Positions 1 through 46,989 of a stretch of 64,000 bases of DNA are shown one piece after another. Origin of the DNA: Malacoraja senta. Lineage: Eukaryota. Location of the stretch: assembly GCA_038087875.1 (NCBI GenBank), contig CM075982.1, forward strand, positions 12,648,001 to 12,712,000. The letters are read 5' to 3'. A model generated the notes under the pieces. That model worked only from the letters and a program-made list of their open reading frames with translations, had not been told where the DNA came from and did no database searches. The position numbers and the translations under genes are program-made. Positions within the stretch are counted from its first letter, which is position 1, and every line of letters begins with the position of its first letter.

Positions 1-673
1 CCCTCCCTTTGGAAGTCGTCGGACTCGGGGTCAGAGCGTATCTGCCCTTCTGCACTCACCTCTTGCAAAGAGGGTGCTTTCAAGCAGGCCTCTACTAGGC
101 ACTGCCAGCGGAGCCGTCCCCACGGCCTCCCGCCTGCACAACTCCTCCTGGAGTGTGGCTTTGTGGAGCAGCCCCTGTATGCGCTGCTCCTTTTGGATAA
201 CCGCTGGGACACGGTATCCTGTCCCCGACGGGTCTCTCCTGGCCTGACTCTGCCGAGTCAATGCCCCTGACAGACTTAGCTTATGCCGACCGCCCGACTG
301 GCGTTGGCTGTGTACCCGGCTGGGCACTTTGCCAAGTCTGTCGCCGCACCGCTACCGGCTTGCGACTCCCCAGAGGTGACAGGCTGCCTTTCAGAGACTG
401 CGCTCCCGCAGCTCTCTCTCTCCTTGTCCGCAGCAGACCTGCACCTTGATGATTTTTTCCTTGTTCCTGCATTGTGGGGAAAAAACACAGCAGCAATTTC
501 TCTACTTTTCTAACTCCTCCAAAGTCTCCCCGACTTTGGTGGAGCTGTAACTACTCACCTGCAGAAGGAGCTCCGTCCTCCTGCTGCTGAGCGCCAATGC
601 GTCAGACGTAATGACGCGCATGCGCCCTGATGGGTCTTCTTCACGTAGTCACTCACGTGACTCCGAAGTAAAA
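1..673 (-). mobile_element. 5' end (5' ITR and start of gag-like region) of a second DIRS1-type retrotransposon copy, running off the window edge
   Basis: Closely similar to 23417-24247; ends in the same terminus ...gtcactcacgtgactccgaagtaaaa at 673. Confidence 0.9.
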
Positions 674-5939: not shown

Positions 5940-6530
5940 ACATTCAGTGTGGCAGCACCTTGTGTCAGCGGCTCGACTGCAGTCCGTCCGTCTTTTCTTT
6001 CTTTTTGTCCCGTTAGATGTATGTTTAATCTCTTCCCTGTACGGGGACCCGACCTTTTCCCTGTCGGGTCTCCATTGTCGTTGGGCCTAACATCGTGGGG
6101 CCGGCGGCCTCCAACCGGAACCAACCTGAGGGCTCCAGTCGTGTAGCCTGCGGACTCACCATCGCGGAGCTGACCGAATTCGGAGTGTGGAGAATCAAGA
6201 CCCGGAGCACGGCCTTACTTCGACCGGCGCGGCCTTAACAGCCGCGGGACTTGCCATCGCCCACCGGGGGCTTTAACATCAGGAGCCCCGGTTGCCTCGA
6301 CGCAGCAGTTGGACTGCTGGACCGCAGGAGAAGAGCAAAGAACAGGGAAGAGACAAGACTTTGCCTTCCATCACAGTGAGGAGGTGTTTGGAGATTCACT
6401 GTGATGGATGTTTATGTAAATTGTGTTAATTGTGTGTCTTGTTTTTTTTTAATGTTATGACTGCAGGAACGAAGTTTCGTTCGAACCTTGTTTGTGTGAA
6501 TGACAATAAATGACATTCTATTCTATTCTA
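5940..6530 (+). mobile_element. GC-rich non-autonomous retroelement with LINE-type 3' stem-loop and (ATTCT)n tail
   Basis: Shares ccttccatcacagtgagg...cactgtgatggatgtt with 9117-9758 and 40060-40963; ends aataaatgacattctattctattct. Confidence 0.7.
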
Positions 6531-6559
6531 AATGTGATGGAAGAACTATTATTGTCCAT

Positions 6560-6670
6560 CTTACCTGGTCTCCGACTTACTCCACGTGGATGTTGTACTG
6601 AAGAGATAATGAAGAGATAATATTCCTGTACTCACCTAGTAAATAAAGAACAATTAGAAAAAGAGTTGTT
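6560..6670 (-). other. Candidate recursive splice site / RS-exon (71 nt, 6635-6565)
   Basis: Minus strand ctctttttctaattgttctttatttactag|GTGAGT...GGA|GTAAGT...CAG|GTAAGA. Confidence 0.4.
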
Positions 6671-6699
6671 GAACAGGTAAACTGGTATTTCTCTACTGT

Positions 6700-6925
6700 A
6701 GACATAAAGAACTCAGATGTTGGTTTACACCAAAGTGCCGGAGTAACTCAATGTATCAGACAGCATCTCTGGAGTAAAAGGAAAGGTGACATTTTGGATC
6801 GGGACCCTTCTTACGACTGGAAGAAGACCAGTCTGAAGAAGGGTCCCAAACCGAAGTGTCGCACATTATTTTTTTCCAGTGATGCTGCCTGACATGTTGA
6901 GCTACTCCAACACTTTAATGCCTAT
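6700..6925. mobile_element. Penelope-derived short element, fold-back, diverged
   Basis: Two inverted halves meeting at ...cccttctt/ctgaagaagggtccc. Confidence 0.7.

Positions 6926-7026: not shown

Positions 7027-7112
<86 letters not shown>
7027..7112. repeat. (ATCA)n microsatellite, the expanded 3' tail of the adjacent retroelement
   Basis: About 21 perfect ATCA units next to tttatt (AATAAA on the minus strand). Confidence 0.95.
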
Positions 7113-7455
7113 TTATTCACACATACACAATAAAGTGCAGTGAAATCAATTTTGCCAGCAGCGGTACAATCAAAAAAGAACACAAAATACACAATAAAAA
7201 TGTAACACAAACATCCACCACAGCATTCTTCATTGTGGTGGAAGGCACAAAGTACAGTCAGTCCCCCTCCATTGTTCCCCCGTGGTCGGGGCCATAAACC
7301 TCTGCAGTCGCCGCTGCGGGCGGCCAGATGTACAGGCCCCCTCGTCGGGACGGTAAGTCCCGAATCGGCGCTTCCCTTCCGGAGACCACGGCTTCAGGAT
7401 GTTGTAGGCCGCAGGCCGGCGGTCGGAGATTCTCTGGGGATCACCGGCGAGGGAA
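7027..7455 (-). mobile_element. 5'-truncated copy of the GC-rich non-autonomous element (family of 40060-40963)
   Basis: Reverse complement resembles 40560-40960. Confidence 0.8.
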
Positions 7456-7509
7456 TGCCTCTGAGCCCTGGTATGAGGACAAGACTGAGGTGGATGTTCC
7501 AGTGATGGG

Positions 7510-8062: not shown

Positions 8063-8341
8063 GGTACACAAAAATGCTGGAGAAACTCAGCGGGTGCAGC
8101 AGCATCTATGGAGCGAAGGAAACAGGCAACGTTTCGGGCCGAAACCCTTCTTCATACCAGGGCTCAGAGGCATTCCCTCGCCGGTGATCCCCGGAGAAGC
8201 TCCGACCGCCGGCCTGCGGCCTACAACATCCTGAAGCCGTGGTCTCCGGAAGGGAAGCGCCGATTTGGGACTTACCGTCCCGACGAGGGGTCCTGTACAT
8301 CTGGCCGCCCGCAGCGGCAACTGCGGAGGTTTATGGCCCCG
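8063..8341. mobile_element. Chimeric insertion (Penelope-derived half plus an inverted copy of 7286-7476) inside a CR1 tail
   Basis: 12-bp TSD gtgtagctggga at 8051-8062 and 8342-8353. Confidence 0.8.
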
Positions 8342-8909: not shown

Positions 8910-9830
8910 ATCATGCAAGGATAGATAGGGTAGATGCACAGAGTCTTTGACTCAGAGTAGGAAAATCAAGAACAGAGGACATAGGTGAGAGGGAAAAGAT
9001 TTAATAGGAACCTGAGGGGCAACAGAGGGTGGGGATATATGGATCGAGTTACCAAAGTAGGCAGTTGAGGCAGGCACTATAACACCATTTAAAAGACATT
9101 TGGATAGGTACATAGATGGCTGCCTCGCCAACAGTCTGTCTGTCCCTTTCTTCTTCGTTGTTTTTTTAGTATGTGTTAAATGTAGGTTTTTAGTGTTCTT
9201 TAGCTTGTTTTTATGTGGGGGTGAGGGAGGGGGTTGGGGGAACCTTTTTCTAATCTCACCTCGACGGAGATGTGATTTTTTCCCATATCTGCCGCCTAAC
9301 ATCGAGGAGCTGGCGGTCTTTGCTGGAGATCGACTTCGAGAGCTCCACCGCGGAAGCTGCGGGTCTTAACATCACGGAGTTCACGACCCCCTTGCCAGGG
9401 ATCGACCTCTGAGCTCTACCGCGGACTTTAACATCGCGGAGCTCGCGGTCTCTGATCAGTGACCGACTTCGGGAACTCCCAGCCGCAGGAGCTTCGACCA
9501 CCCTGATGCGAGAGCTTAGATCGCCCCGATGCGGGAGCTTAGATCGTCCCGACCGCAGGAGATAAATGAGGGACGAAGATTAGACTTTATTTCCTTCCAT
9601 CACAGTGAGGAACGTGGGGAATCCACTGTGGTGGATGTTTCTGTTAACTTTTATGTAGTTGTGTGTCTTGTTGCTTTTTTTAGTATGGCTGCATGGTAAT
9701 TCGCATATCACTGTACCTTAATTGGTACACGTGACAATAAAAGAGCTTTAAAACCTTTGAGATAGGAAGTTTACGGATAGGGGCCAAAAACAGACAGGTG
9801 GGACTAGTGCAGATGGGTCATCATGAGGCC
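8910..9830 (+). mobile_element. CR1 3' fragment interrupted by the element at 9117-9758
   Basis: ggatagatagggtagatgcacagagtc...aaagacatttggataggtacat, resuming at 9760 as gataggaagttt...gggactagtgcagatggg. Confidence 0.7.
9117..9758 (+). mobile_element. GC-rich non-autonomous retroelement with internal tandem repeats and Rex1/L2-like tail
   Basis: Internal repeats acatcgcggagctc... and 22-bp ccgatgcgggagcttagatcg; tail cactgtaccttaattggtacacgtgacaataaa. Confidence 0.75.
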
Positions 9831-13320: not shown

Positions 13321-15432
13321 AAGATACATAGATACATAGATACATAGAAAATAGGTGCAGGAGTAGGCCATTCGGCCCTTCGAGCCTGCACCGCCATTCA
13401 ATATGATCATGGCTGATCATCCAACTCAGTATCCCACACCTGCCTTCTCTCCATACCCCCAATCCCTTTAGCCACAAGGGCCACATCTAACTCCCTCTTA
13501 AATATAGCCAATGAACTGGCCTCAACTACCCTTTGTGGCAGAGAGTTCCAGAGATTCACCACTCTCTGTGTGAAAACGTTTTTCCTCATCTCGGTCTTAA
13601 AGGATTTCCCCCTTATCCTTAAGCTGTGACCCCTTGTCCTGGACTTCCCCAACATCGGGAACAATCTTCCTGCATCTAGCCTGTCCAACCCCATAAGAAT
13701 TTTGTACGTTTCTGTAAGATCCCCTCTCAATCTCCTAAATTCTAGCGAGTATAAGCCAAGTCTATCCAGTCTTTCTTCATATGAAAGTCCTGACATACCA
13801 GGAATCAGTCTGGTGAACCTTCTCTGCACTCCCTCCATGGCTATAATGTCCTTCCTCAGATTTGGAGACCAAAACTGTATGCCAAGACCCTGTACAACTG
13901 CAGTAGAACCTCCCTGCTCCTATACTCAAATCCTTTTGCTATGAAAGCTAACATACCATTCGCTTTCTTCACTGCCTGCTGCACCTGCATGCCTACTTTC
14001 AATGACTGGTGTACCATGACACCCAGGTCTCGCTGCATCTCCCCTTTTCCTAATCGGCCACCATTTAGATAATAGTCTACTTTCCTGTTTTTGCCACCAA
14101 AGTGGATAACCTCACATTTATCCATATTATACTGCATCTGCCAAACATTTGCCCACTCACCCAGCCTATCCAAGTCACCTTGCAGTCTCCTAGCATCCTC
14201 CTCACAGCTAACACTGCCCCCCCAGCTTAGTGTCATCCGCAAACTTGGAGATGTTGCCTTCAATTCCCTCATCCAGCTCATTAATATAAATTGTAAATAG
14301 CTGGGGTTCCAGCACTGAGCCTTGCGGTACCCCACTAGTCACTGCCTGCCATTGTGAAAAGGACCCGTTTACTCCTACTCTTTGCTTCCTGTTTGCCAGC
14401 CAGTTCTCTATCCACATCAATACTGAACCCCCAATACCGTGTTCTTTAAGTTTGTATACTAATCTCTTATGTGGGACCTTGTCGAAAACCTTCTGAAAGT
14501 CCAGATATAAGACATCCACTGGTTCTCCCCTATCCACTCTACAAGTTACATCCTCGAAAAATTCTATAAGATTCGTCAGACATGATTTACCTTTCGTAAA
14601 TCCATGCTGACTTTGTCCAATGATTTCACCACTTTCCAAATGTGCTGCTATCCCATCTTTAATAACTGACTCTAACAGTTTCCCCACTACCGATGTTAGA
14701 CTAACTGGTCTGTAATTCCCCGTTTTCTCTCTCCCTCCCTTCTTAAAAAGTGGGGTTACGTTTGCTACCCTCCAATCCTCAGGAACTACTCCAGAATCTA
14801 AAGAGTTTTGAAAAATTATCACTAATGCATCCACTATTTCTGGAGCTACTTCCTTAAGTACTCTGGAATGCAGCCTATCTGGCCCTGGTGATTTATCGGC
14901 CTTTAATCCATTCAATTTACCCAACACCACTTCCCGACTAACCTGGATTTCACTCAGTTCCTCCATCTCCTTTGACCCGCGGTCCCCTGCTATTTCCGGC
15001 AGATTATTTATGTCTTCCTTAGTGAAGACGGAACCAACGTAGTTATTCAATTGGTCCGCCATATCCTTGTTCCCCATGATCAATTCACCTGTTTCTGACT
15101 GCAAGGGACCTACATTTGTTTTAACTAATCTCTTTCTCTTCACATATCTATAAAAACTTTTGCAGTCAGTTTTTATGTTCCCTGCCAGTTTTCTTTCATA
15201 ATCTATTTTCCCTTTCCTAATTAAGCCCTTTGTCCTCCTCTGCTGGTCTCTGAATTTCTCCCAGTCCTCTGGTATGCTGCTTTTTCTGGCTAATTTGTAC
15301 GCATCATCTTTTGCTTTGATACTATCCCTGATTTCCCTTGTTATCCACGGATGCACTACTTTCCCATATTTATTCTTTTGCCAAACTGGGATGAACAATT
15401 TTTGTAGTTCATCCATGCAGTCTTTAAATGCT
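13321..15432 (-). mobile_element. Young 5'-truncated CR1 LINE
   Basis: (TCTATGTA)n tail, 3' UTR and RT coding region. Confidence 0.95.
13407..15416 (-). pseudogene. CR1 ORF2 reverse transcriptase, frameshifted near 14220 with a small deletion near 13880
   Basis: [89 protein letters not shown]. Confidence 0.95.
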
Positions 15433-16099
15433 GGAGGCCGCTTCTTGGGCTTTTCTGTTCCAATGAATGGCTTGCCCCTTGCTCACCATGAAGATCAAAG
15501 ATTTAAGCCTTTATCGCTTGTGAAACTATTTGAAAAAGAAGTGGTGATTCAAATGAACAAATAAAAGGAGGTGCGTAGAATAAGGGTCAGTTCACTCACT
15601 GTGACTCACTCCCAATCAGATTGATTCTCCATTGAAATATTTGTATTATTAACATAGAGCAATTGGTCACATACCACAATTCTTAAATAAACTATATGTT
15701 GTAGCCCTTCGTTAATGGTGTTAAAAAGCATGAAAGACAAGGTAAAAAAAAGCAAAGCCAAACAACCTATTTTCTATGTGCTTTATTTTAAACCTTGGGT
15801 CGAACAACTGTTATGTTCCTGACCAGCTCCTAACTGCAGTTCTCCCTGGGCTTGAGCTATGGTGCACAATCTGCGGGGCACAGTGGTTCAAACATTGTGG
15901 TCTCCACATTAACTTCTGTCAATCAGCCTTTTCCATGGTCTTCCCGAGGTGGCAGCTGCCCTTCCGATCCGGAATGCCCTCCTCCACCTTGACCTGTTAT
16001 GATCTGGGGTGTGGGCATCTAGTCACCATTGCCTCAGCCACATTTGGTGCGGAGCTTCACCACTACCCCACCCCTCCCCCACCACACCCCATAACTCTT

Positions 16100-20095: not shown

Positions 20096-20304
20096 TTTTA
20101 AAGCTCTGTGATTTTTATGCCGCAGATCAAAATTCCGGCTTCTCACTGCATCGATTGACTCTGAGTATCATCAATAATGCTGTAAACATGACATTGCATA
20201 TCATGCAAAAACAAAAGTTTTATTTTTGGTCATAAAACAACCAATAAACCCTCTTAATGTAGGGCAACAAACGAAACAGAATGAAACAGTATTTAAAACA
20301 GACT

Positions 20305-21300
20305 TTAAATAATAGCAACAGCACTCAATATTGAGTTGGCAAACAGCCCTCCATCGGCAATCGGCCGATGGTAGTATTGCTGAAACACAAATTCATTATT
20401 CCAACCTGCGGCTTTTAATATATGGTCGATGGGAACGTCCATCGCCCTGGCCGCGGATGTTGTTACTGCGCTAGTGGAATGAGATGTAAACACATAAATG
20501 TTAATTCCTGCCTGAACCAACTCTTGCTTTAACCACCTTGAAATAGTCTGAATTGCCACTCTTTTATGTTGGCTTTTTGTAACTGACAAATAATCCTGTT
20601 TCTTCTTGTCTTAAAGCCCTTGTGGCTTCAATGTAATGTAACAAATGTGTCCTTACACATAAACATGGAGCTGTAGGATATGCTGAGAACACAATCTTAA
20701 AGCCTGTCACACCTGGCCTGCTTTGTTTGAGCAGGTCAGAAATATAAAACAGAACCTTCTCTGTATTCACTTCCATTCTCTCGAACTGAAGTTTTTGGAA
20801 AGTCTGCACTCTCTGTACTGACACCAATGCCATTAGCATAGCCAATTTCATGGTTAATTTTAACAAAGTTAGACGTGACAAGGACCCAATGACGAAGTAT
20901 GTTACGAACAACACTTACCTCGCAGATTACCATATACCTAGGCTTAGGCGGTTTGGAATTAAAGATTCCTTTCATCAACCTAGATATGAGAGGGTGAGAA
21001 CCTATACTTTGTGTCCGTGTACCTATTACAAGATATGCCGACCAAGCACTTCTAGCTGTATTGATAGCAGTATAGCTAAGACCCTCATCATAATAAAGTG
21101 CAGATAAACTCTAACACATTTTCAATAACTACAGTATCATATTGATTATTCTTTTGAACACCATATTGTTCCCATTTTCTTATTTTTATTTTTAATTTTT
21201 TTTAATTTTTTTTTTACATAAGTCATATACTGTTTTTTCTCCAGGCTGCAGTGAGTATATCCACCGTTTGCCTAGAAAGTCCTCGACCAATGTAAGGCAT
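20305..21300 (-). pseudogene. DIRS tyrosine recombinase, frameshifted
   Basis: GLSRQTVDILTAAW; MKGIFNSKPPKPRY; KLAMLMALVSVQRVQT; LLKQSRPG; LCVRTHLLHYIEAT; TISRWLK; HSTS (HxxR mutated); ILKAAGW..FQQYYHRPI. Confidence 0.9.
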
Positions 21301-21379
21301 TCTTAAAACCTGCAAATTAACAGATCCATACCATCACATAACGGATGAACTTAATGCGTTACTGGATGCTCCAGGAAAT

Positions 21380-21620
21380 TCCTACTGTTTGGAATCAGCA
21401 AAAAGAGGTTGGATCGCTATCTGTAACATCAAAGGGAACCATGGTTGAATCAGGCCATTTGGTATCACCAAAACCCCTGAAGCGGCATCCTGCTTGATTT
21501 TCTCAAACACCGACCTATGAGGCAGAATGGTGGGAAAATGTACACAAACATATCATCCCAATTTAGTGAAAAAACATCAATTGCCACTGCCCCTGGATCT
21601 GGTGCCTATGAAACATATTT
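21380..21620 (-). pseudogene. DIRS DAM-like methyltransferase domain remnant
   Basis: PDPGAVAIDVFSLNW..VYIFPPFCLIGRCL..VIP..QPWFP. Confidence 0.8.
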
Positions 21621-21649
21621 TGGCCTTCCATATAGAAGTACTTTGTTCT

Positions 21650-22720
21650 TGAACACATCCTGGTTCCACATCCACTCTGTGTTATGATGGAATTTTCGTG
21701 AGCTGCCATCTGGTACTACATTAAGTTTCCCTGGCAGATAGATAGCTCCAATCCAAATCTCTCTATCCCTACTCCAGGTCCAATTCTATTTGGCAACCTG
21801 TCACATGATAACGATTTGATTCGACCCATGTGATTCATATCAGCAACTGCTGTAGTGTTGTCTATTTTGCACTGCACATGCAAACTAGTTTAGTTAGTGC
21901 CATAAGCCTTGAGTCCATAAAATACTCTTGGTTAATTCCCCATGTTTGCAGAAGCAATGTCCATCTGTCTCCACTGCTGGTTCTTGTATCAGTAGCACCC
22001 TACCCAAGTGCTCTGACATCTGTCTGCAAATCATGGAAGCTTGGTCCAATAACACTTTGGAACTACTAGTGGACACATGCTGAATCCACCATTGTACATC
22101 AGCAACAGCCTCTATTGATAGAAGCATAGGTCTATTATAATGACCCCAATGTATCCTCAATGCTTGTTCCTTTGACCTTTGTAATTGTAGATAATAAAGT
22201 GGCCATATTGAACTGCTGGAAATGCTGCCAGCCATTACCACAGCAGACTTGTCACCTGGCTAATTGAAGGCTGTGTGTCAGCAATTAACTTGATATAGCT
22301 CTTAATTAGCTCTACCCTTTTTTGCCTGGGCAAGGTCACAATGATGTTGATTAAGTCCATTGTGAACCCAACTAGTCAATTTGTGTCACAGGTATAAATT
22401 TAGATTTCTCTGGATAGCTTATAAAGCCCAATTAAAAAATGTTTTTTTACCAACTGACACTGATGCTTCAGCTGTTTCCTTTGATTGTCCTACAATCAAG
22501 ATATTATCTAGCTAAGCCATGAGCACGTGACCTTGACTTCTCATCATGCCTAGAATAGGTTTTAACAACTTTGTAATCCCTCTAGAAGCTGAAGAGAAAC
22601 CATTAGGCAGTGGATTGTATTGGCATAATTGCCCCATCCAGCTGAATTTTAAACCTTCAGTATAAACATATCTGAGGTACACATTTAATTGTATCACATT
22701 AGATCTGTCTACATCAGAAC
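21650..22720 (-). pseudogene. DIRS RT-RNase H remnant with the N-terminal part of RT deleted
   Basis: LKFSWMGQLCQYNPLPNGFSSASRGITKLLKP..MA*LDNILI (degenerate YLDD); DVQWW; QTDV..LG*GA RNase H motif. Confidence 0.85.
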
Positions 22721-22759
22721 CAGACCCTCTTACCTCCTTACCACCTGGCATTCTTCCCC

Positions 22760-24060
22760 GGCCTTCAGCTGGATATCTCACCTCCGTGGCGGTGCTACAG
22801 CCGAACGCCAACTGCGCTGCATTGTAGCTGGACTCGTCCCTTGCCCGGACCAGTCTGCTCCCTTATAGGGATACTTCCGCTTTGGTGAATATGTGGCTGC
22901 CGTCTTAGCCTCCTCCTCCAGCTCCTTCACCTGCTGTGCGAAATCCTCGCCAAACAGCTGTGCCGGTTGCACTTTGCCAGGCTGGCAGAGTGAAGCATAT
23001 TTAGCATTGATGGTTGGTCTAATCGCATCTTGCGTAGGCAGTTGATCTCAAAGTGGGCACTCCACAATAGCGCCTTTTGTTGTAATTTGTCATGGCCTCT
23101 CCATCCACCATCCTGGCAAAGCTCGTTATACCAGATGCCAGCAACTTTAAAAATATGCTGGAGCTTCACATGCTCCTGGGCTTTCATTAGTATGCCCATC
23201 TTGCCCCAATTCTTCCTGTTCTCAACAGGAACTTTTAACAGTCCACAGTTGGTTGGGGCTTCATACTTCATTACTGTCTCATCCATTGTCAGCTCCTGTA
23301 GCTGATGTGAGACTTGGTAATTTATGCTGGTGGCAAGTTCCTCACCCAGAGGCTCACCAGCGTCCGACGACATTGCAAACCGTGCTGCACACGGTGTCAG
23401 CTCTGACAGCTGCCTGCCCTCCCTTTGGAAGTCGTCGGACTCGGGGTCAGAGCGTATCTGCCCTTCTGCACTCACCTCTTGCAAAGAGGGTGCTTTCAAG
23501 CAGGCCTCTACTAGGCACTGCCAGCGGAGCCGTCCCCACGGCCTCCCGCCTGCACAACTCCTCCTGGAGTATGGCTTTATGAAGCAGGCCTCTCCTAGGC
23601 ACTGCCAGCGGAGCCTTCCCTAAGGCTTCCCGCCTGCACTACTCCTCCTGGAGTGTGGCTTTATGAAGCAGACCTCTCCTAGGCATTGCCAGCGGAGCCT
23701 TCCCTATGGCTTCCCGTCTGCACAACTCCCCTGGAGCGTCTCTGTGGAGCAGCCCCTGTATGAGCTGCTCCTTTTGGATAACCGCTGGGGAACGGTATCC
23801 TGTCCCCGACGGGACTCTCGTGGCCCGACTCTGTGGAGTCTATAGCCCTTACAGACTTGACTTATGCCTACCGCCCGACTGGCGTTGGCTGTGTACCCGG
23901 CTGGGCACTTTGCCAAGTCTGTCGCCGCACCGCTACCGGCTTGCGACTCCCCCGAGGTGACAGGCTGCCTTTCAGAGACTGCGTCCCGCAGCTCTCTCTC
24001 TCCTTGTCGGCAGCAGCCTGCACCTTTTCCTTGTTCCTGTATGTGGGGGAAAAACACACA
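22760..24060 (-). pseudogene. DIRS gag-like ORF1 remnant containing an 84-bp tandem repeat
   Basis: PTNCGLLKVP..W..VKLQHI..AHFEINCLRK..LFGEDFAQQVKEL; three repeat units at 23498-23750. Confidence 0.7.
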
Positions 24061-24609
24061 GAAACAATTTCTATACTTTTCTCTAACTCCTCCAAAGTCT
24101 CCCCGACTTTGGTGGAGCTGTAATTACTCACCTTGCAGCAAGAGGTCCGTGCTCCTGCTGCGTTGTCGCCAATGCGTCAGACGTAATGACGCGCATGCGC
24201 CCTGACGGGGTTCTTCACGTAGTCACTCACGTGACTCCGAAGTAAAATGATTGATTACATGTTACATTTTACAAAGGGACACATATCCAATATTATATGT
24301 TTCATTATGTTATGAAATACAAAACAAATACATCGTCTGCCTGATTTAAGCCCAGCATTTAGACAACTATTGAGGAATCCTCATGGAAGGAAGAACAAGA
24401 CTTAGAGGTGTTCATGTAACAATACTCCCACACAAATGCCAGATCCTAAATTCCCTTAATATCCAAAAGTTAATGTCTGAATCTGCAAGGGTCCTGACCT
24501 GAAATGTCATCCATCCTTTTTCTTTAGAGATGCTGCCTGACCCGCTGAGTTCCTCCTGCACTTTGTGTCTATCTGCGTTACATTAGGTTTCTTCAACCAA
24601 ATCCTTAAT

Positions 24610-33049: not shown

Positions 33050-34230
33050 GATATTTTTCCGTAACCTTCCCTTTGACTCTTTGTCCGTGACCTTCCCTCT
33101 ATCATAAGGATAAAAGTGGTGCTGTCATTGATGACTGCGCAGTTTTCAATTCCATTCAAGATTCTTCACAAATCCCAGGCCAACATGTGGCAAGTTCTAG
33201 AAACATGCAAGCAAGGGCTGATAAATGGCAAGTAACTTTCATGCCAAACAAGTGCTAAGAAAAGAACAGTTATAATATGTGATAGTCTCACCATATATCC
33301 CTGATATTGAATATTACATCCTTGAGCCATCTACCAACAACATCCTGTGGATCACCATTGACCAGAAATTCAAATCATTCAACCACATAAATATGGTGGC
33401 TACAAGAGCAGGTCAGAGGCTGGGTATCTTACACTGAGAATTTCACTTCCTGATGCTCCAAAGTCTTTCCATCATCTATGGCACAATCAGTAGAGCTATA
33501 GGATTTTATCCCTGTGCCTGGATGAGTGCAGCTCTGGTATGCCAAAAGCTCAACACTATCTCAGACAAAGACTGTTTAATAGATATTCCAGCCACCTCGG
33601 TAAACGTTTCATTCCCTCTACCACACGAAGTGTACCATGTCCAACATTCTCTGCAGTTGGTTGTAGAGAGCACATTGACGTCATCTCCCTAACCTCTACA
33701 ACCAAGAAGTAAGTAAGTAAGTAAGTAAGTTTATTGGCCAAGTATTCACATACAAGGAATTTGCCTTGGTGCTCCGCCCACAAGTAACAACATGACATAC
33801 AGTGACAGTTACGAATGTCTCCGAAAACACTAAACATTAATAATAATAAGACATTAATGATAAAACACCATTGATCAAGCATGTGAACCAACAAAATACC
33901 AGATCAAATACCAGAAGAGCGAGGACAGCAAGTGTAGGGAACATCCTAGGCTGCAAATAGTCACAGAATTATACAGCTCAGAGATAGACCCTTTGGCCCA
34001 ACTCGTCTTTTGCCCCTAAACCTTTCCTATCCATGTACCGGCACAAATGTCAATTCTATCATTATTATTCTACCAAATATATTGTACTTTCATTGTCATG
34101 GGTTTAAATCCTTGAGCTCCCACACCTTTCCAAGAGCACTGATGGAACACATTCACTAGAGGAACTGCAGCAGCTCAAGGAGACGGCTAACCACCATCTT
34201 CTTCAGGGCAGTTAGAAATAACCAGCGACA
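33050..34230 (+). mobile_element. Old CR1/L2-group LINE with nested insertions, including a (TTAC)n-tailed element at 33705-33910
   Basis: gggctgataaatggcaagtaactttcatgccaaacaagtgc; agagcaggtcagaggctggg; 3' tail at 34130-34230. Confidence 0.65.
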
Positions 34231-38945: not shown

Positions 38946-40059
38946 AGATCTTCAATCATTCAATACAATCATTCTGTTCTTTGAAATCTCTCTCCCCTTT
39001 GCTCTATCTATTGTATTTGAGTTTGACAATTGTATTAATGTATGGTATATCTAATCTGTTTGGATAGCATGCGCAACAAATTGTTCACTGCAGCTCAGTG
39101 CACATGACAATAATAAACCTAAACTTTCTCTGATGTTAATGGTCAATATTTATTTTCCTCAGGGAAGTCGCATTCGACTCCTGATTCCTTACAGGCAGAT
39201 GCTGGGTTAGAGGCAGACTGGATTCAACACAAGGCTGTGATGGTGCTGGGTTTGGACTTGGCCCCAGTGTTGGCCACATGCATCCCATGGACTGAATGTT
39301 CTGACTCTCTGCACCCGGAGAGCTTCCCATGGATCGGACCGGGCACTGAGATATAACTGAGCCTCGTGCACTGCATGGCCAAGGTCAGAGGCTGAGCTGA
39401 CAGGCTTTTGGAACCCGGAAGGAGGAGGGAGAAAGGGTCTTCTTGTTTGCAGACCTTATTTCTCAAGGCTGTTCGGGGAACCACATCCATCTCAGGCCCT
39501 TAATATCCAGAGGCTGTCCATCAGACATATGCCCAGACTGTTCTGATTGTGGAAATTACAGTTGCTGCCATCTCAAGAATCCCAGTCTCTGAATCATTCC
39601 AGATGGTGGCAGCTGATCTGTTTAATTGCTGCTGTCCTTTGCTGAGTAGATACCTCCTGAGAAACACCCTGCACCTTAGCTGCTGTAGGCATCACCCACA
39701 ATCATCCTGAATATTGAAACCCCAAATCACACTTAGACAAAGCAGTCCTTGAGCTCTTTAAGGGACAGCTGCCTGCACTCTGTGTACAAAGTGAGCATTT
39801 TATGTGAAACCTCATTTTGCAAAAAGAGTTTTCTGCTTCTAACAGCCAATCATTCTCAAGAGCAACACATTGCCCTATCATCACCAGCTGTGCTCATTAG
39901 TGTACACAGAACGATCATTCCAGGTAATTAGATTAATTAATAATCCTTACAGAGGAGTGCCATGATCTACATGGACATACCTGAGAAATAAATCAGAAGC
40001 CATTCTAATGGTGCTGGGCTGGAAGGCTGAGAATTTGTCACTTAAGCTACATCAGAACA

Positions 40060-40963
40060 TGGGTCGGTGGGAACGCTGCGAGCCGGCAGCCCTGCCAGCA
40101 GCGTGTTACTTTTATCTACTTTTATTGTTTTTTTAGTGTGTCTCAATGTGTGCTTTTAATGTTTCTGTGTGTGTCCTGTGTGGGGGGGGTAAGGGGGAAA
40201 CAGTTTTGGTCGCCTCCTCCACGGAGAGGCGACTTTTTCCAGGTCGCCTCCCCCGTGGCCTAACATCGAGGATCGGTGCGGCCTTTCCCGGAGACGCGCC
40301 CGGGGCTTCAGCGGCGGGCGCAGCGATGACTCTTTCGTCGCGGAGCAGGCGAGCCCTCGCCGGGGGGTCGCCGGAGGCGAGCGCTCCGTTCACTGGCCCA
40401 CGGCAGCCTGAAGCCGCAGTCTTAAGAGCTCCAGCTGGCTCGGCGTCCGGAGCCTGGGATCCCTCGTTGGGGACCCCGGAGGTCGGATAAGAGCTCCGAC
40501 CGCCAGCCCGCAGCCAACTTCCAACCGCGGGCGCAGTGGGGACTTACCATACGGAGCGGGATCCCTCGCTGGAGATCCCTGGAGGGGGAGCTCCGACCGC
40601 CGGCCCTGCAGTCTGCGGTGCTTCTGGCTGCGGCGCGGTGGGGACTTTAGATCTTCGACCGCCGCCTGCGGCCTACACCATTCTGAAGCCGCGGTCTCCG
40701 GTAGGGAAGCACCGACTCAGGACTTGCCTGGACTTACCTTGTCTGCACATCTGGACGCCAGCAGCGGCGACTGCGGAGGGTTGTAGTCCAGACCATGGGG
40801 GAAAATGGAGGAGGACTGACCAAAACGTTGTGCCTTCCACACAGTGATGAATGCTGTGGTGGATGTTTGTGTTACATTTTATTGTATATTGTGTGTTCTT
40901 TTTTTTTGTAAAATTCATTTCACTGCACTTTATGTACAAGTGACGAATAAAACTTGACTTGAC
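40060..40963 (+). mobile_element. Near full-length GC-rich non-autonomous retroelement
   Basis: Internal gggatccctcg..gagctccgaccgcc repeats; tail gaataaaacttgacttgac. Confidence 0.75.
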
Positions 40964-42757: not shown

Positions 42758-43634
42758 TGTGGGGACTGCATTTTATCCACCAGATGCAGTTGGTTCCTTC
42801 CTAACACATCCCAATGTAAATAAGACAAAGCATTCCATGGAATACCACAACGTGGCTAAAACCCCGCAGAAGGGTAACATCTTTAAGTAAAAGTAAGGAA
42901 CAACGACAGGCACTTTAGGATGAAGATTGGCAAGTGGTCATGGATTTAAACATGCCAGATATTCATAGATTCAAATGTTCCCAATATAAATTATTGTTTT
43001 GGACATTTTCCCTTGGGGTCTCTCCTGCCCAGCTGCAGGCAGCTCCTGAACTTTCTCGCAGTTACTATGCAGCGCCCTAGAACGTCTCAAGGTTTGCTGG
43101 ATGACAAGAGCTCTGACAGAAAGATCAGGCATTGAAGAGGTCAGAGTAGCAGAACAAATCAGGAGTGCACTCCGCACTAATTACTCTCGACATGCAGGAT
43201 TGGAGAATGGCTATAAGTATTCAACTGGGAAAAACTGGAGACCCGAGAAGAGTTTTCTTTTTGGCAGAAATACATAGTCAGGCCTTTATATGTACAAAAT
43301 AGACGTTTGTCTTCAGCAAACAAGAACCAGTTTTAACTCAACATCTGGAAAGCACTAGAGGATGGAACACATGAAGAATTCCCGCAACATCGCCATTTCA
43401 CGGTAAGGAACGTTGAGGCCCCAGAGAAGGTCATCAAGAAGGGTCAAAGCCAAGGTCTTTTGGCGATGTCGTTGTTCAGTGAACTGAATCACCTTTAACC
43501 AGCAAGATGAACACTTAAGGATATTTATGGGTATGGTATTATGAGCTAGGTAAGGACATGAAGATTGAGGGTCCTTGTACAAAATCAGCAAAACTATAGT
43601 TTAAAGAATCTAATTTTGTCTTGCAGTCAGTTTC

Positions 43635-44497
43635 CTCTAGAATGGATTCCAAGCATGGCTTTGTATCCAGCAGGTCATGCCTTATTAGTTTGATCATGTT
43701 TTTCCAGGAAGTGACAAAAGTGATCGATGATGGTAGGGCAGCGGATGTTGTTTACATGGATTTTAGTAAAGCATTTGATATGATTTTCCATGGTAGGTTG
43801 ATCCAGAAGATTAAAACCCATCAGATTCACAGTGACTTGGTCGTATGTATTCGGAACTGGCTTACTGATTGAAGACAGAGGGTTGTGGTGGAATGGCATT
43901 ATATTGACCAGAGGCCTGTGACCAGTGGAGTTTCTCAGGGATCTGTGTTAGGGCCCCTGTTGTTTGTGACATATAAGCTGTTTTTGGAGTGTGGCATACA
44001 GTTCTGTCACCCCGTTGTAGGAAGGATGTTGAGGCTTTGGAGATGGATGCAGAAGAGGTTCTCTTGAATGCTAACTGGAGTAGGGGTTATTAGCTACAAG
44101 AAGGGGTTGACAACCTTGGGTTGTTTTCTGTGGAACACTACAGATTGAGGGGCAGCCTGATATAGTATATAAAGGTATGATAGACATAAACAGGGAAGGG
44201 AATCAGTAGAGTGGGCATTCTTTTTTTCACAGGGTGAAAACGTGAAGGACAAGAGGGTATAGCTTTAAAGTGAGAGGGGCAAGTTTTTTTTTAACAGAAA
44301 GGGTGGTGGGTGCCTGGAACATGCTGCCAAAGGCGGTAGTGGAGGCAGATATGAAAGCGGTGTTTTAGAGTATTTTAGATAGGCACATAAATGTGCAGGG
44401 AGGTATAGGGATCATATGCAGGTAGATGAGAGCTTGTTTGGCACGGACATTGTGGGCCGAAGGGCCTGTTGTGCGATGTATTTTTCTATGTTCTATG
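43635..44497 (+). mobile_element. CR1 fragment with internal deletion
   Basis: KHGFVSSRSCL..DVVYMDFSKAFD..SGVSQGSVLGPLLF; 3' tail. Confidence 0.85.
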
Positions 44498-46789: not shown

Positions 46790-46989
46790 NNNNNNNNNNN
46801 NNNNNNNNNNNNNNNNNNNNNNNNNNNNNNNNNNNNNNNNNNNNNNNNNNNNNNNNNNNNNNNNNNNNNNNNNNNNNNNNNNNNNNNNNNNNNNNNNNNN
46901 NNNNNNNNNNNNNNNNNNNNNNNNNNNNNNNNNNNNNNNNNNNNNNNNNNNNNNNNNNNNNNNNNNNNNNNNNNNNNNNNNNNNNNNNN
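46790..46989. other. Assembly gap (200 N)
   Basis: Run of N. Confidence 1.

What the first reader, a model, noticed from the sequence alone, without database searches (positions are those of the whole stretch)
6560..6670. Consensus-like recursive-splicing site (AG|GTGAGT) with an RS-exon on the minus strand
Seen on the minus strand: branch-like ttctaat, a pyrimidine tract and TAG (ctctttttctaattgttctttatttactag, AG at 6637-6636), immediately followed by a consensus donor GTGAGT. Two more donors follow, GGA|GTAAGT after 55 nt and CAG|GTAAGA after 71 nt (6565/6564). Established: vertebrate recursive splice sites in very long introns have this architecture, a 3' splice site that regenerates a 5' splice site plus a short RS-exon needed for exon definition; known hosts are mostly long neuronal genes such as CADM1/2, ANK3, ROBO2, NTM and OPCML. 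It sits in a roughly 170-bp non-repeat island between two transposon insertions, in a window with no recognisable coding exon. An internal 11-bp tandem duplication (attatctcttc x2) argues against ordinary coding use, although one frame is open (VSTGILSLHYLFSTTSTWSKSET). Inference: the window may lie inside a giant minus-strand intron that is removed stepwise, which would be notable in a chondrichthyan.
Basis: partly seen in the sequence, partly recalled or inferred. Interest (0 to 1): 0.7.

Follow-up and report, generated by a model that had tools for sequence, protein, structure and literature searches.

The report
Unsupported recursive-splice-like motif between transposons
The splice-signal pattern is really in the sequence, but chance produces patterns of this quality many times in a genome this size, and nothing I could run showed the site is used, conserved or inside a gene on that strand.

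Summary
The letters are as described. On the minus strand there is a branch-like TTCTAAT, a pyrimidine tract, and TAG (AG at 6637-6636) abutting GTGAGT. GGA|GTAAGT follows after 55 nt and CAG|GTAAGA after 71 nt. The 11-nt tandem duplication and the one open frame are also real. The roughly 170-bp stretch (6536-6705) has no other copy in the window and lies between a transposon tail and a palindromic MITE-like repeat.

The pattern is not more than chance. With a simple splice-site matrix and third-order Markov simulations, 0.67 equally good AG|GT sites are expected per 64-kb window, and 0.057 with a good donor 30-120 nt downstream. That is about 68 chance hits over the 1,202 windows read in this genome. 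The window itself holds about 20 pseudoexon-like acceptor/donor pairs of similar strength.

The interpretation could not be tested. Read laying and the second sequencing-run run were closed, no annotation or related genome was reachable, and transposon orientation is mixed. The scan holds two other recursive-site candidates elsewhere in this genome, neither followed up.

My best reading is a chance pseudoexon-like motif cluster (about 0.7). A genuine recursive site has about 0.07 and an ordinary, poison or non-coding-RNA exon about 0.15. Interest is low.

The parts
6653..6659 (-). Branch-point-like TTCTAAT, with the candidate branch A at 6654, 18 nt upstream of the G of the AG
   Evidence: Read directly. 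No AG lies between it and 6637-6636.
6636..6665 (-). Acceptor-like region: a pyrimidine-rich tract with purine interruptions ending in TAG (AG at 6637-6636)
   Evidence: My approximate acceptor matrix gives 7.4 bits. 131 minus-strand sites in the window reach 7 bits or more.
6630..6635 (-). Donor-like GTGAGT directly after the AG (the would-be regenerated 5' splice site)
   Evidence: It scores 10.7 bits with TAG as the exonic part. It is 1 of 8 AGGTGAGT in the window.
6600..6621 (-). 11-nt tandem duplication attatctcttc x2 (6621-6611 and 6610-6600). With the AG at 6599-6598 it forms an internal acceptor-like ctcttCAG.
6575..6583 (-). Weaker donor-like GGA|GTAAGT (exon end 6581, 55 nt after the AG)
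   Evidence: It scores 6.2 bits.
6559..6567 (-). Strong donor-like CAG|GTAAGA (exon end 6565, 71 nt after the AG)
   Evidence: It scores 11.1 bits. 11 minus-strand donors of 11 bits or more occur in the window.
6536..6705 (.). About 170 bp with no other copy in the window
   Evidence: Sensitive blastn of 6541-6730 against the window gives only the self hit, apart from 6706-6730, which matches the flanks of other MITE copies.
6100..6535 (+). Flanking repeat: a GC-rich body, then ...TGACAATAAATGA and an ATTCT-type tail. Other copies lie at 9309-9745, about 7110-7340 (reverse) and about 40750-40930.
   Evidence: Local alignments.
6706..6916 (.). Flanking MITE-like palindromic repeat (arms 6732-6820 and 6828-6916), with more than 15 copies in the window

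Best explanation
This is a chance juxtaposition of splice-signal look-alikes, that is, a pseudoexon with a donor motif at its first base. It lies in unique, probably unconstrained DNA left between two transposon insertions. It has no established role. If the minus strand is transcribed at all here, the spliceosome might use the site now and then as a cryptic exon. There is no sign of a selected, efficient recursive splice site. The sequence facts and the chance statistics are shown by tool results. The absence of function is inferred from them and from the low prior.
For: 1. The expected number of AG|GT sites at least this good on both matrices is 0.67 per 64-kb window. With a donor of at least 8 bits 30-120 nt downstream it is 0.057 (Markov-3 simulations). 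Over the 1,202 windows already read in this genome that gives about 68 chance hits. Requiring a donor of 11 bits or more (11 per 64 kb on this strand) still leaves about 12.
2. The window itself holds 9 (+) and 11 (-) acceptor/donor pairs of similar strength 40-250 nt apart. It also holds a second RS-like site at 39981 and another triple donor-like cluster at 33709. Triple clusters are expected 0.3 times per window.
3. The 11-nt tandem duplication inside the piece is typical replication slippage in unconstrained DNA.
4. Only about 10 efficient intronic recursive sites were known in human when PMC6224609 was written, so very few motif matches are real.
5. There is no evidence of a minus-strand transcript. 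No exon or Rfam family was found. Transposons with readable ORFs lie on both strands.
Against: This is the single best combined acceptor-plus-donor AG|GT site in the window. It has a well-placed branch-like motif, an AG-free zone, a very strong downstream donor at 71 nt, and lengths (55 or 71 nt) that would shift the frame. Those are the features a real cryptic RS-exon has. These same features were used to pick it, so they do not count as independent support. No RNA or conservation test could be run, so use of the site is not excluded.
Confidence: 0.7

Rival explanations
1. This is a genuine recursive splice site in a giant minus-strand intron. The 71-nt (or 55-nt) RS-exon is defined by the acceptor at 6636 and the donor at 6565/6564 and is spliced to the upstream exon. 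The regenerated donor (upstream exon end plus GTGAGT) then removes the RS-exon with the rest of the intron.
For: All sequence-level requirements are met: YAG|GTRAGT, a pyrimidine tract, a branch-like motif, and a downstream donor within 100 nt. The intronic part of GTGAGT scores about 1.6 bits better than that of GTAAGA on my matrix. After ligation to a typical exon end, the recursive donor could therefore compete, as PMC6224609 says efficient RS requires. Including 55 or 71 nt would shift the frame, and two of three frames hold stops. No coding exon was recognised in the 64 kb, which fits a very long intron as well as it fits intergenic DNA.
Against: No spanning gene, RNA evidence or conservation evidence exists. 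The pattern is expected by chance tens of times in the DNA already scanned. The internal slippage duplication argues against constraint. A LINE and a DIRS-like element lie in the same (sense) orientation, which is somewhat disfavoured in introns. The downstream donor is so strong that inclusion rather than traceless removal is as likely.
Confidence: 0.07
2. This is an ordinary spliced exon: a cassette, poison or decoy exon of a protein-coding gene, or an exon of an unannotated non-coding RNA. It would use the acceptor at 6636 (or the internal one at 6598) and the donor at 6565/6564. The GTGAGT at its start would be incidental or repressed.
For: The acceptor and the 11.1-bit donor make a good exon-definition unit. 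PMC6224609 reports thousands of annotated human exons that start with a donor-like motif, 93.8% of them constitutive, so a leading GTGAGT does not by itself imply recursion. Frame 0 is open.
Against: There is no transcript evidence. The lengths 55 and 71 nt are not multiples of three. The peptide is low-complexity and is interrupted by an 11-nt duplication that would have shifted the frame. The window holds about 20 similar pairs. The exact 42-aa ORF across the stretch is in no public gene-call collection searched.
Confidence: 0.15

Closest known systems
Vertebrate cryptic RS-exons / recursive splice sites (Sibley et al. 2015, as described in PMC6224609, PMC5126111 and bioRxiv 10.1101/2025.08.14.666599; hosts such as CADM1, CADM2, ANK3)
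   Same: A YAG|GTRAGT junction with a pyrimidine tract, a short downstream piece ending in a second strong donor, and frame-breaking lengths.
   Different: The known sites lie in identified introns longer than 150 kb, are evolutionarily conserved, and are supported by saw-tooth coverage, junction or lariat reads. None of this is shown here, and the host gene is unknown.
Intronic pseudoexons (splice-site look-alike pairs that are not normally spliced; reviewed for DMD in PMC7175933 and for disease activation in PMC8819188, both listed but not read)
   Same: An acceptor-like and a donor-like motif at exon-like spacing in repeat-rich non-coding DNA, at a density matching chance (about 20 such pairs in this window).
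   Different: This one also carries a donor motif at its very first base, which most pseudoexons lack. That addition is expected by chance at the rate computed.
Annotated RS-exons repressed by the exon junction complex (PMC6224609)
   Same: A candidate exon beginning with a strong donor-like GTGAGT.
   Different: Those are known, mostly constitutive exons of annotated mRNAs. Here no transcript is known to contain the piece.

Membership tests
Vertebrate recursive splice site with RS-exon | An acceptor (pyrimidine tract plus YAG) directly abutting a donor motif (GTRAGT) | tested here: met
   TAG|GTGAGT at 6638-6630 on the minus strand. It scores 7.4 and 10.7 bits on my approximate matrices.
Vertebrate recursive splice site with RS-exon | A downstream competing donor that defines a short RS-exon | tested here: met
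   GGA|GTAAGT at 55 nt (6.2 bits) and CAG|GTAAGA at 71 nt (11.1 bits).
Vertebrate recursive splice site with RS-exon | Location inside a long intron of a gene transcribed from the same strand | not testable with these tools
   No annotation or eukaryotic genome collection was reachable. No exon was recognised in the window. Exact-protein look-ups found nothing. Earlier scan notes hold nothing near this site.
Vertebrate recursive splice site with RS-exon | RNA evidence of use: a junction from the upstream exon to the site, lariats, or saw-tooth coverage | not testable with these tools
The first run search only listed runs holding 6-15% (RNA-type) or 23-77% (unknown type) of the sampled words of 6300-6760. 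That cannot be interpreted without laying the reads.
Vertebrate recursive splice site with RS-exon | Evolutionary conservation of the site above its intronic surroundings | not testable with these tools
   No related eukaryotic genome could be searched. A metagenome scan for the 22-nt core found nothing. The internal 11-nt slippage duplication hints at a lack of constraint.
Vertebrate recursive splice site with RS-exon | Occurrence beyond chance expectation | tested here: not met
   0.67 sites per window are expected for the junction alone and 0.057 with a downstream donor, which gives about 68 in the 1,202 windows read.
Ordinary coding exon | An open frame, a frame-preserving or homology-supported sequence, and a protein match | tested here: inconclusive
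   One of three frames is open, but the lengths 55 and 71 nt are not multiples of three. The peptide is too short for the protein search tools.

The most novel reading that the evidence does not exclude
The site is a working recursive splice site with a poison RS-exon in a giant minus-strand intron of a cartilaginous fish. Together with the second RS-like site 33 kb upstream at 39981, it would show stepwise intron removal by exon definition in cartilaginous fishes as well as bony vertebrates.
Probability: 0.06. Interest if true: 0.45.

Novelty: not a real feature. Interest (0 to 1): 0.12.

Why it matters
If real, this would be the first recursive splice site described in a cartilaginous fish. 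A full-text search for 'recursive splicing' plus 'shark' found only one paper, unread, whose title and abstract do not concern the topic. It would extend a mechanism already shown in flies, zebrafish and mammals, so a specialist would find it expected rather than surprising. As it stands, it mainly shows that a consensus AG|GTRAGT with a nearby donor is not evidence of recursive splicing in a repeat-rich genome of this size. Motif-only candidates of this kind, including the two other unfollowed ones in this genome, need RNA or conservation support before they deserve attention.

Tried and rejected
1. RNA evidence. The first sequencing-run run listed 24 coded runs.
2. Host gene through exact-protein look-up. 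The 402-aa LINE ORF and the 42-aa ORF across the unique stretch are not on record.
3. Earlier scan notes. Nothing lies near or inside the window. Only two unfollowed recursive-site candidates exist, on other pieces.
4. Exon search. Stop-to-stop ORFs of 80 aa or more and Pfam scans of 20 of them gave only transposon signals. These were RVT_1 at 14211-15482 on the minus strand, a weak RVT_1 at 43600-43869 on the plus strand, and a weak Phage_integrase at 20308-20610 on the minus strand. Orientation is therefore mixed and says nothing about a transcript strand.
5. Base-composition skew. The plus strand has T>A and C>G. These two asymmetries point to opposite strands, so I rejected skew as uninformative.
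6. Strand bias of RS-like sites. The split was 9 minus against 3 plus at loose thresholds, which is not significant (two-sided binomial about 0.15, my arithmetic).
7. Rfam. There were no matches in the window.
8. Metagenome scan for the 22-nt core. It gave no hits.
9. Sibley et al. 2015 and the 2016 review are not held in the paper library. Their content is cited only through papers that were readable.
10. MaxEntScan and SpliceAI are not installed. I used position matrices with frequencies recalled from published human compilations, so the bit scores are approximate and serve only for ranking and for the chance simulations.

Full report
**Observation.** Reading 6300-6900 on the minus strand confirms the finding letter for letter.
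- The sequence is ...ctctttttctaattgttctttatttacTAG|GTGAGT, with the AG at 6637-6636 and GTGAGT at 6635-6630.
- The branch-like ttctaat is at 6659-6653. Its candidate branch A at 6654 lies 18 nt from the AG, with no intervening AG.
- GGA|GTAAGT has its exon end at 6581 (55 nt). CAG|GTAAGA has its exon end at 6565 (71 nt).
- The 11-nt tandem duplication attatctcttc x2 spans 6621-6600.
- Frame 0 of the 71-nt piece is open, and the other frames carry TGA or TAA.
The second repeat copy followed by AG (6600-6598) forms another acceptor-like ctcttCAG, so 17- and 33-nt pieces are also possible.

**Surroundings.**
- Positions 6536-6705 have no other copy in the window (sensitive blastn).
- On the low-coordinate side lies a repeat with at least three other copies in the window. 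It ends in ...TGACAATAAATGA plus an ATTCT-type tail at about 6513-6535.
- On the other side lies a palindromic MITE-like element (arms 6732-6820 and 6828-6916; its flank starts at about 6706) with more than 15 copies in the window.
- The 'island between two transposons' is therefore correct at window level. Uniqueness in the whole genome could not be tested.
- The rest of the window is repeat-rich. It holds a LINE reverse transcriptase on the minus strand (14211-15482, RVT_1 E 5.5e-26). A DIRS-like element on the minus strand at about 20.3-24.2 kb has a partial second copy at 1-600. Reverse-transcriptase remnants lie on the plus strand near 43.6 kb.
- No Rfam family and no non-transposon protein domain were found in the 20 ORFs scanned.

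**Is it more than chance?**
- AGGTGAGT occurs 8 times in the window against 2.46 expected. Four of these belong to the two copies of the DIRS-like element, and only 6637 has a pyrimidine tract.
- I used position matrices for vertebrate acceptors and donors with frequencies recalled from published human compilations. The bit values are therefore approximate. The site scores 7.4 (acceptor) and 10.7 (donor) and is the only AG|GT in the window as good on both.
- Third-order Markov simulations trained on the window give 0.67 such sites per 64 kb on both strands together. With a donor of at least 8 bits 30-120 nt downstream they give 0.057.
- The scan had read 1,202 windows of this genome, so about 68 chance hits of this architecture are expected in what was read.
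- Requiring a donor as strong as CAG|GTAAGA (11.1 bits; 11 such donors on the minus strand of this window) leaves roughly a dozen.
- The window also holds 9 (+) and 11 (-) acceptor/donor pairs of comparable strength at exon-like spacing. There is a second RS-like site, ttatttctCAG|GTATGT at 39981, with a GTAAGG 30 nt downstream, and another triple donor-like cluster at 33709. Triple clusters are expected 0.3 times per window.
- The pattern is therefore real but statistically ordinary once the number of places looked at is counted.

**Testing the interpretation.** None could be tested.
- The first run search listed runs holding 6-15% (RNA-type) and 23-77% (type unknown) of the sampled words of 6300-6760. 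This stretch is two-thirds repeat.
- No tool searches eukaryotic genomes.
- Exact-protein look-ups for two window ORFs found nothing, and a metagenome scan for the core found nothing.
- Transposon orientation is mixed and the two compositional skews contradict each other. Neither strand shows a sign of transcription.

**What is known.**
- Recursive splicing in vertebrates starts by defining an RS-exon, and efficient removal needs a recursive donor that outcompetes the downstream donor (PMC6224609).
- The same paper counts about 10 efficient intronic sites in human against 197 in Drosophila. It also finds thousands of annotated exons that merely begin with a donor-like motif, 93.8% of them constitutive.
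- Known vertebrate sites lie in very long introns (the first human screen was limited to introns over 150 kb; PMC10156609).
- They are described as evolutionarily conserved, and the zebrafish cadm2a RS-exon was targeted experimentally (bioRxiv 10.1101/2025.08.14.666599; PMC5126111).
- Only one paper in the library holds both 'recursive splicing' and 'shark', and neither term appears in its title or abstract. I did not read it.

**Mechanism and odds.**
- If the minus strand is transcribed through here as part of a long intron, the likeliest course is exon definition of the 71-nt piece and ligation to the upstream exon. Competition would follow between the regenerated donor (upstream exon end plus GTGAGT) and CAG|GTAAGA.
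- The intronic half of GTGAGT scores about 1.6 bits better on my matrix. Both traceless removal and inclusion of a frame-shifting poison exon are therefore conceivable.
- That scenario needs three untested conditions. The prior for a motif-only hit is low, and the slippage duplication suggests the stretch is not constrained.
- I put a chance pseudoexon-like cluster without a selected function at about 0.7. An ordinary, poison, decoy or non-coding-RNA exon gets about 0.15 and a genuine recursive site about 0.07. The remainder is left for anything else.

**Verdict.** The interpretation cannot be told and is disfavoured on priors and statistics. It is not a demonstrated feature, and interest is low. 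The scan has two other recursive-site candidates on other pieces of this genome, neither followed up, and the same caution applies to them.

Noticed in passing
window 39951-40000 (minus strand): A second RS-like junction, ttatttctCAG|GTATGT (G of the AG at 39981). Its acceptor score is better than that of the reported site, and a TCT|GTAAGG lies about 30 nt downstream.
   Followed up: partly
window 20300-24200 and 1-600 (minus strand): A DIRS-like element (weak tyrosine-recombinase/Phage_integrase hit at 20308-20610) with a second partial copy at the window start. Both copies carry two AG|GTGAGT motifs at matching positions (61/23477 and 560/24133).
   Followed up: partly
window 13400-15500 (minus strand): A LINE remnant with a 402-aa ATG ORF and a clear RVT_1 domain (E 5.5e-26). 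The exact ORF is not on record in the public gene-call collection.
   Followed up: partly
window 7287-7479 and 8149-8341: An inverted repeat with 193-nt arms, 96% complementary, 669 nt apart. It lies next to an (ATCA)n microsatellite at 7027-7116 and looks like a recent inverted duplication or an element with long terminal inverted repeats.
   Followed up: no
window 33709 (plus strand): Three GTRAGW donor-like hexamers within 80 nt. This is the only such cluster in the window besides the reported one.
   Followed up: no
window 46790-46989: A run of 200 N (assembly gap or masked), left untouched.
   Followed up: no
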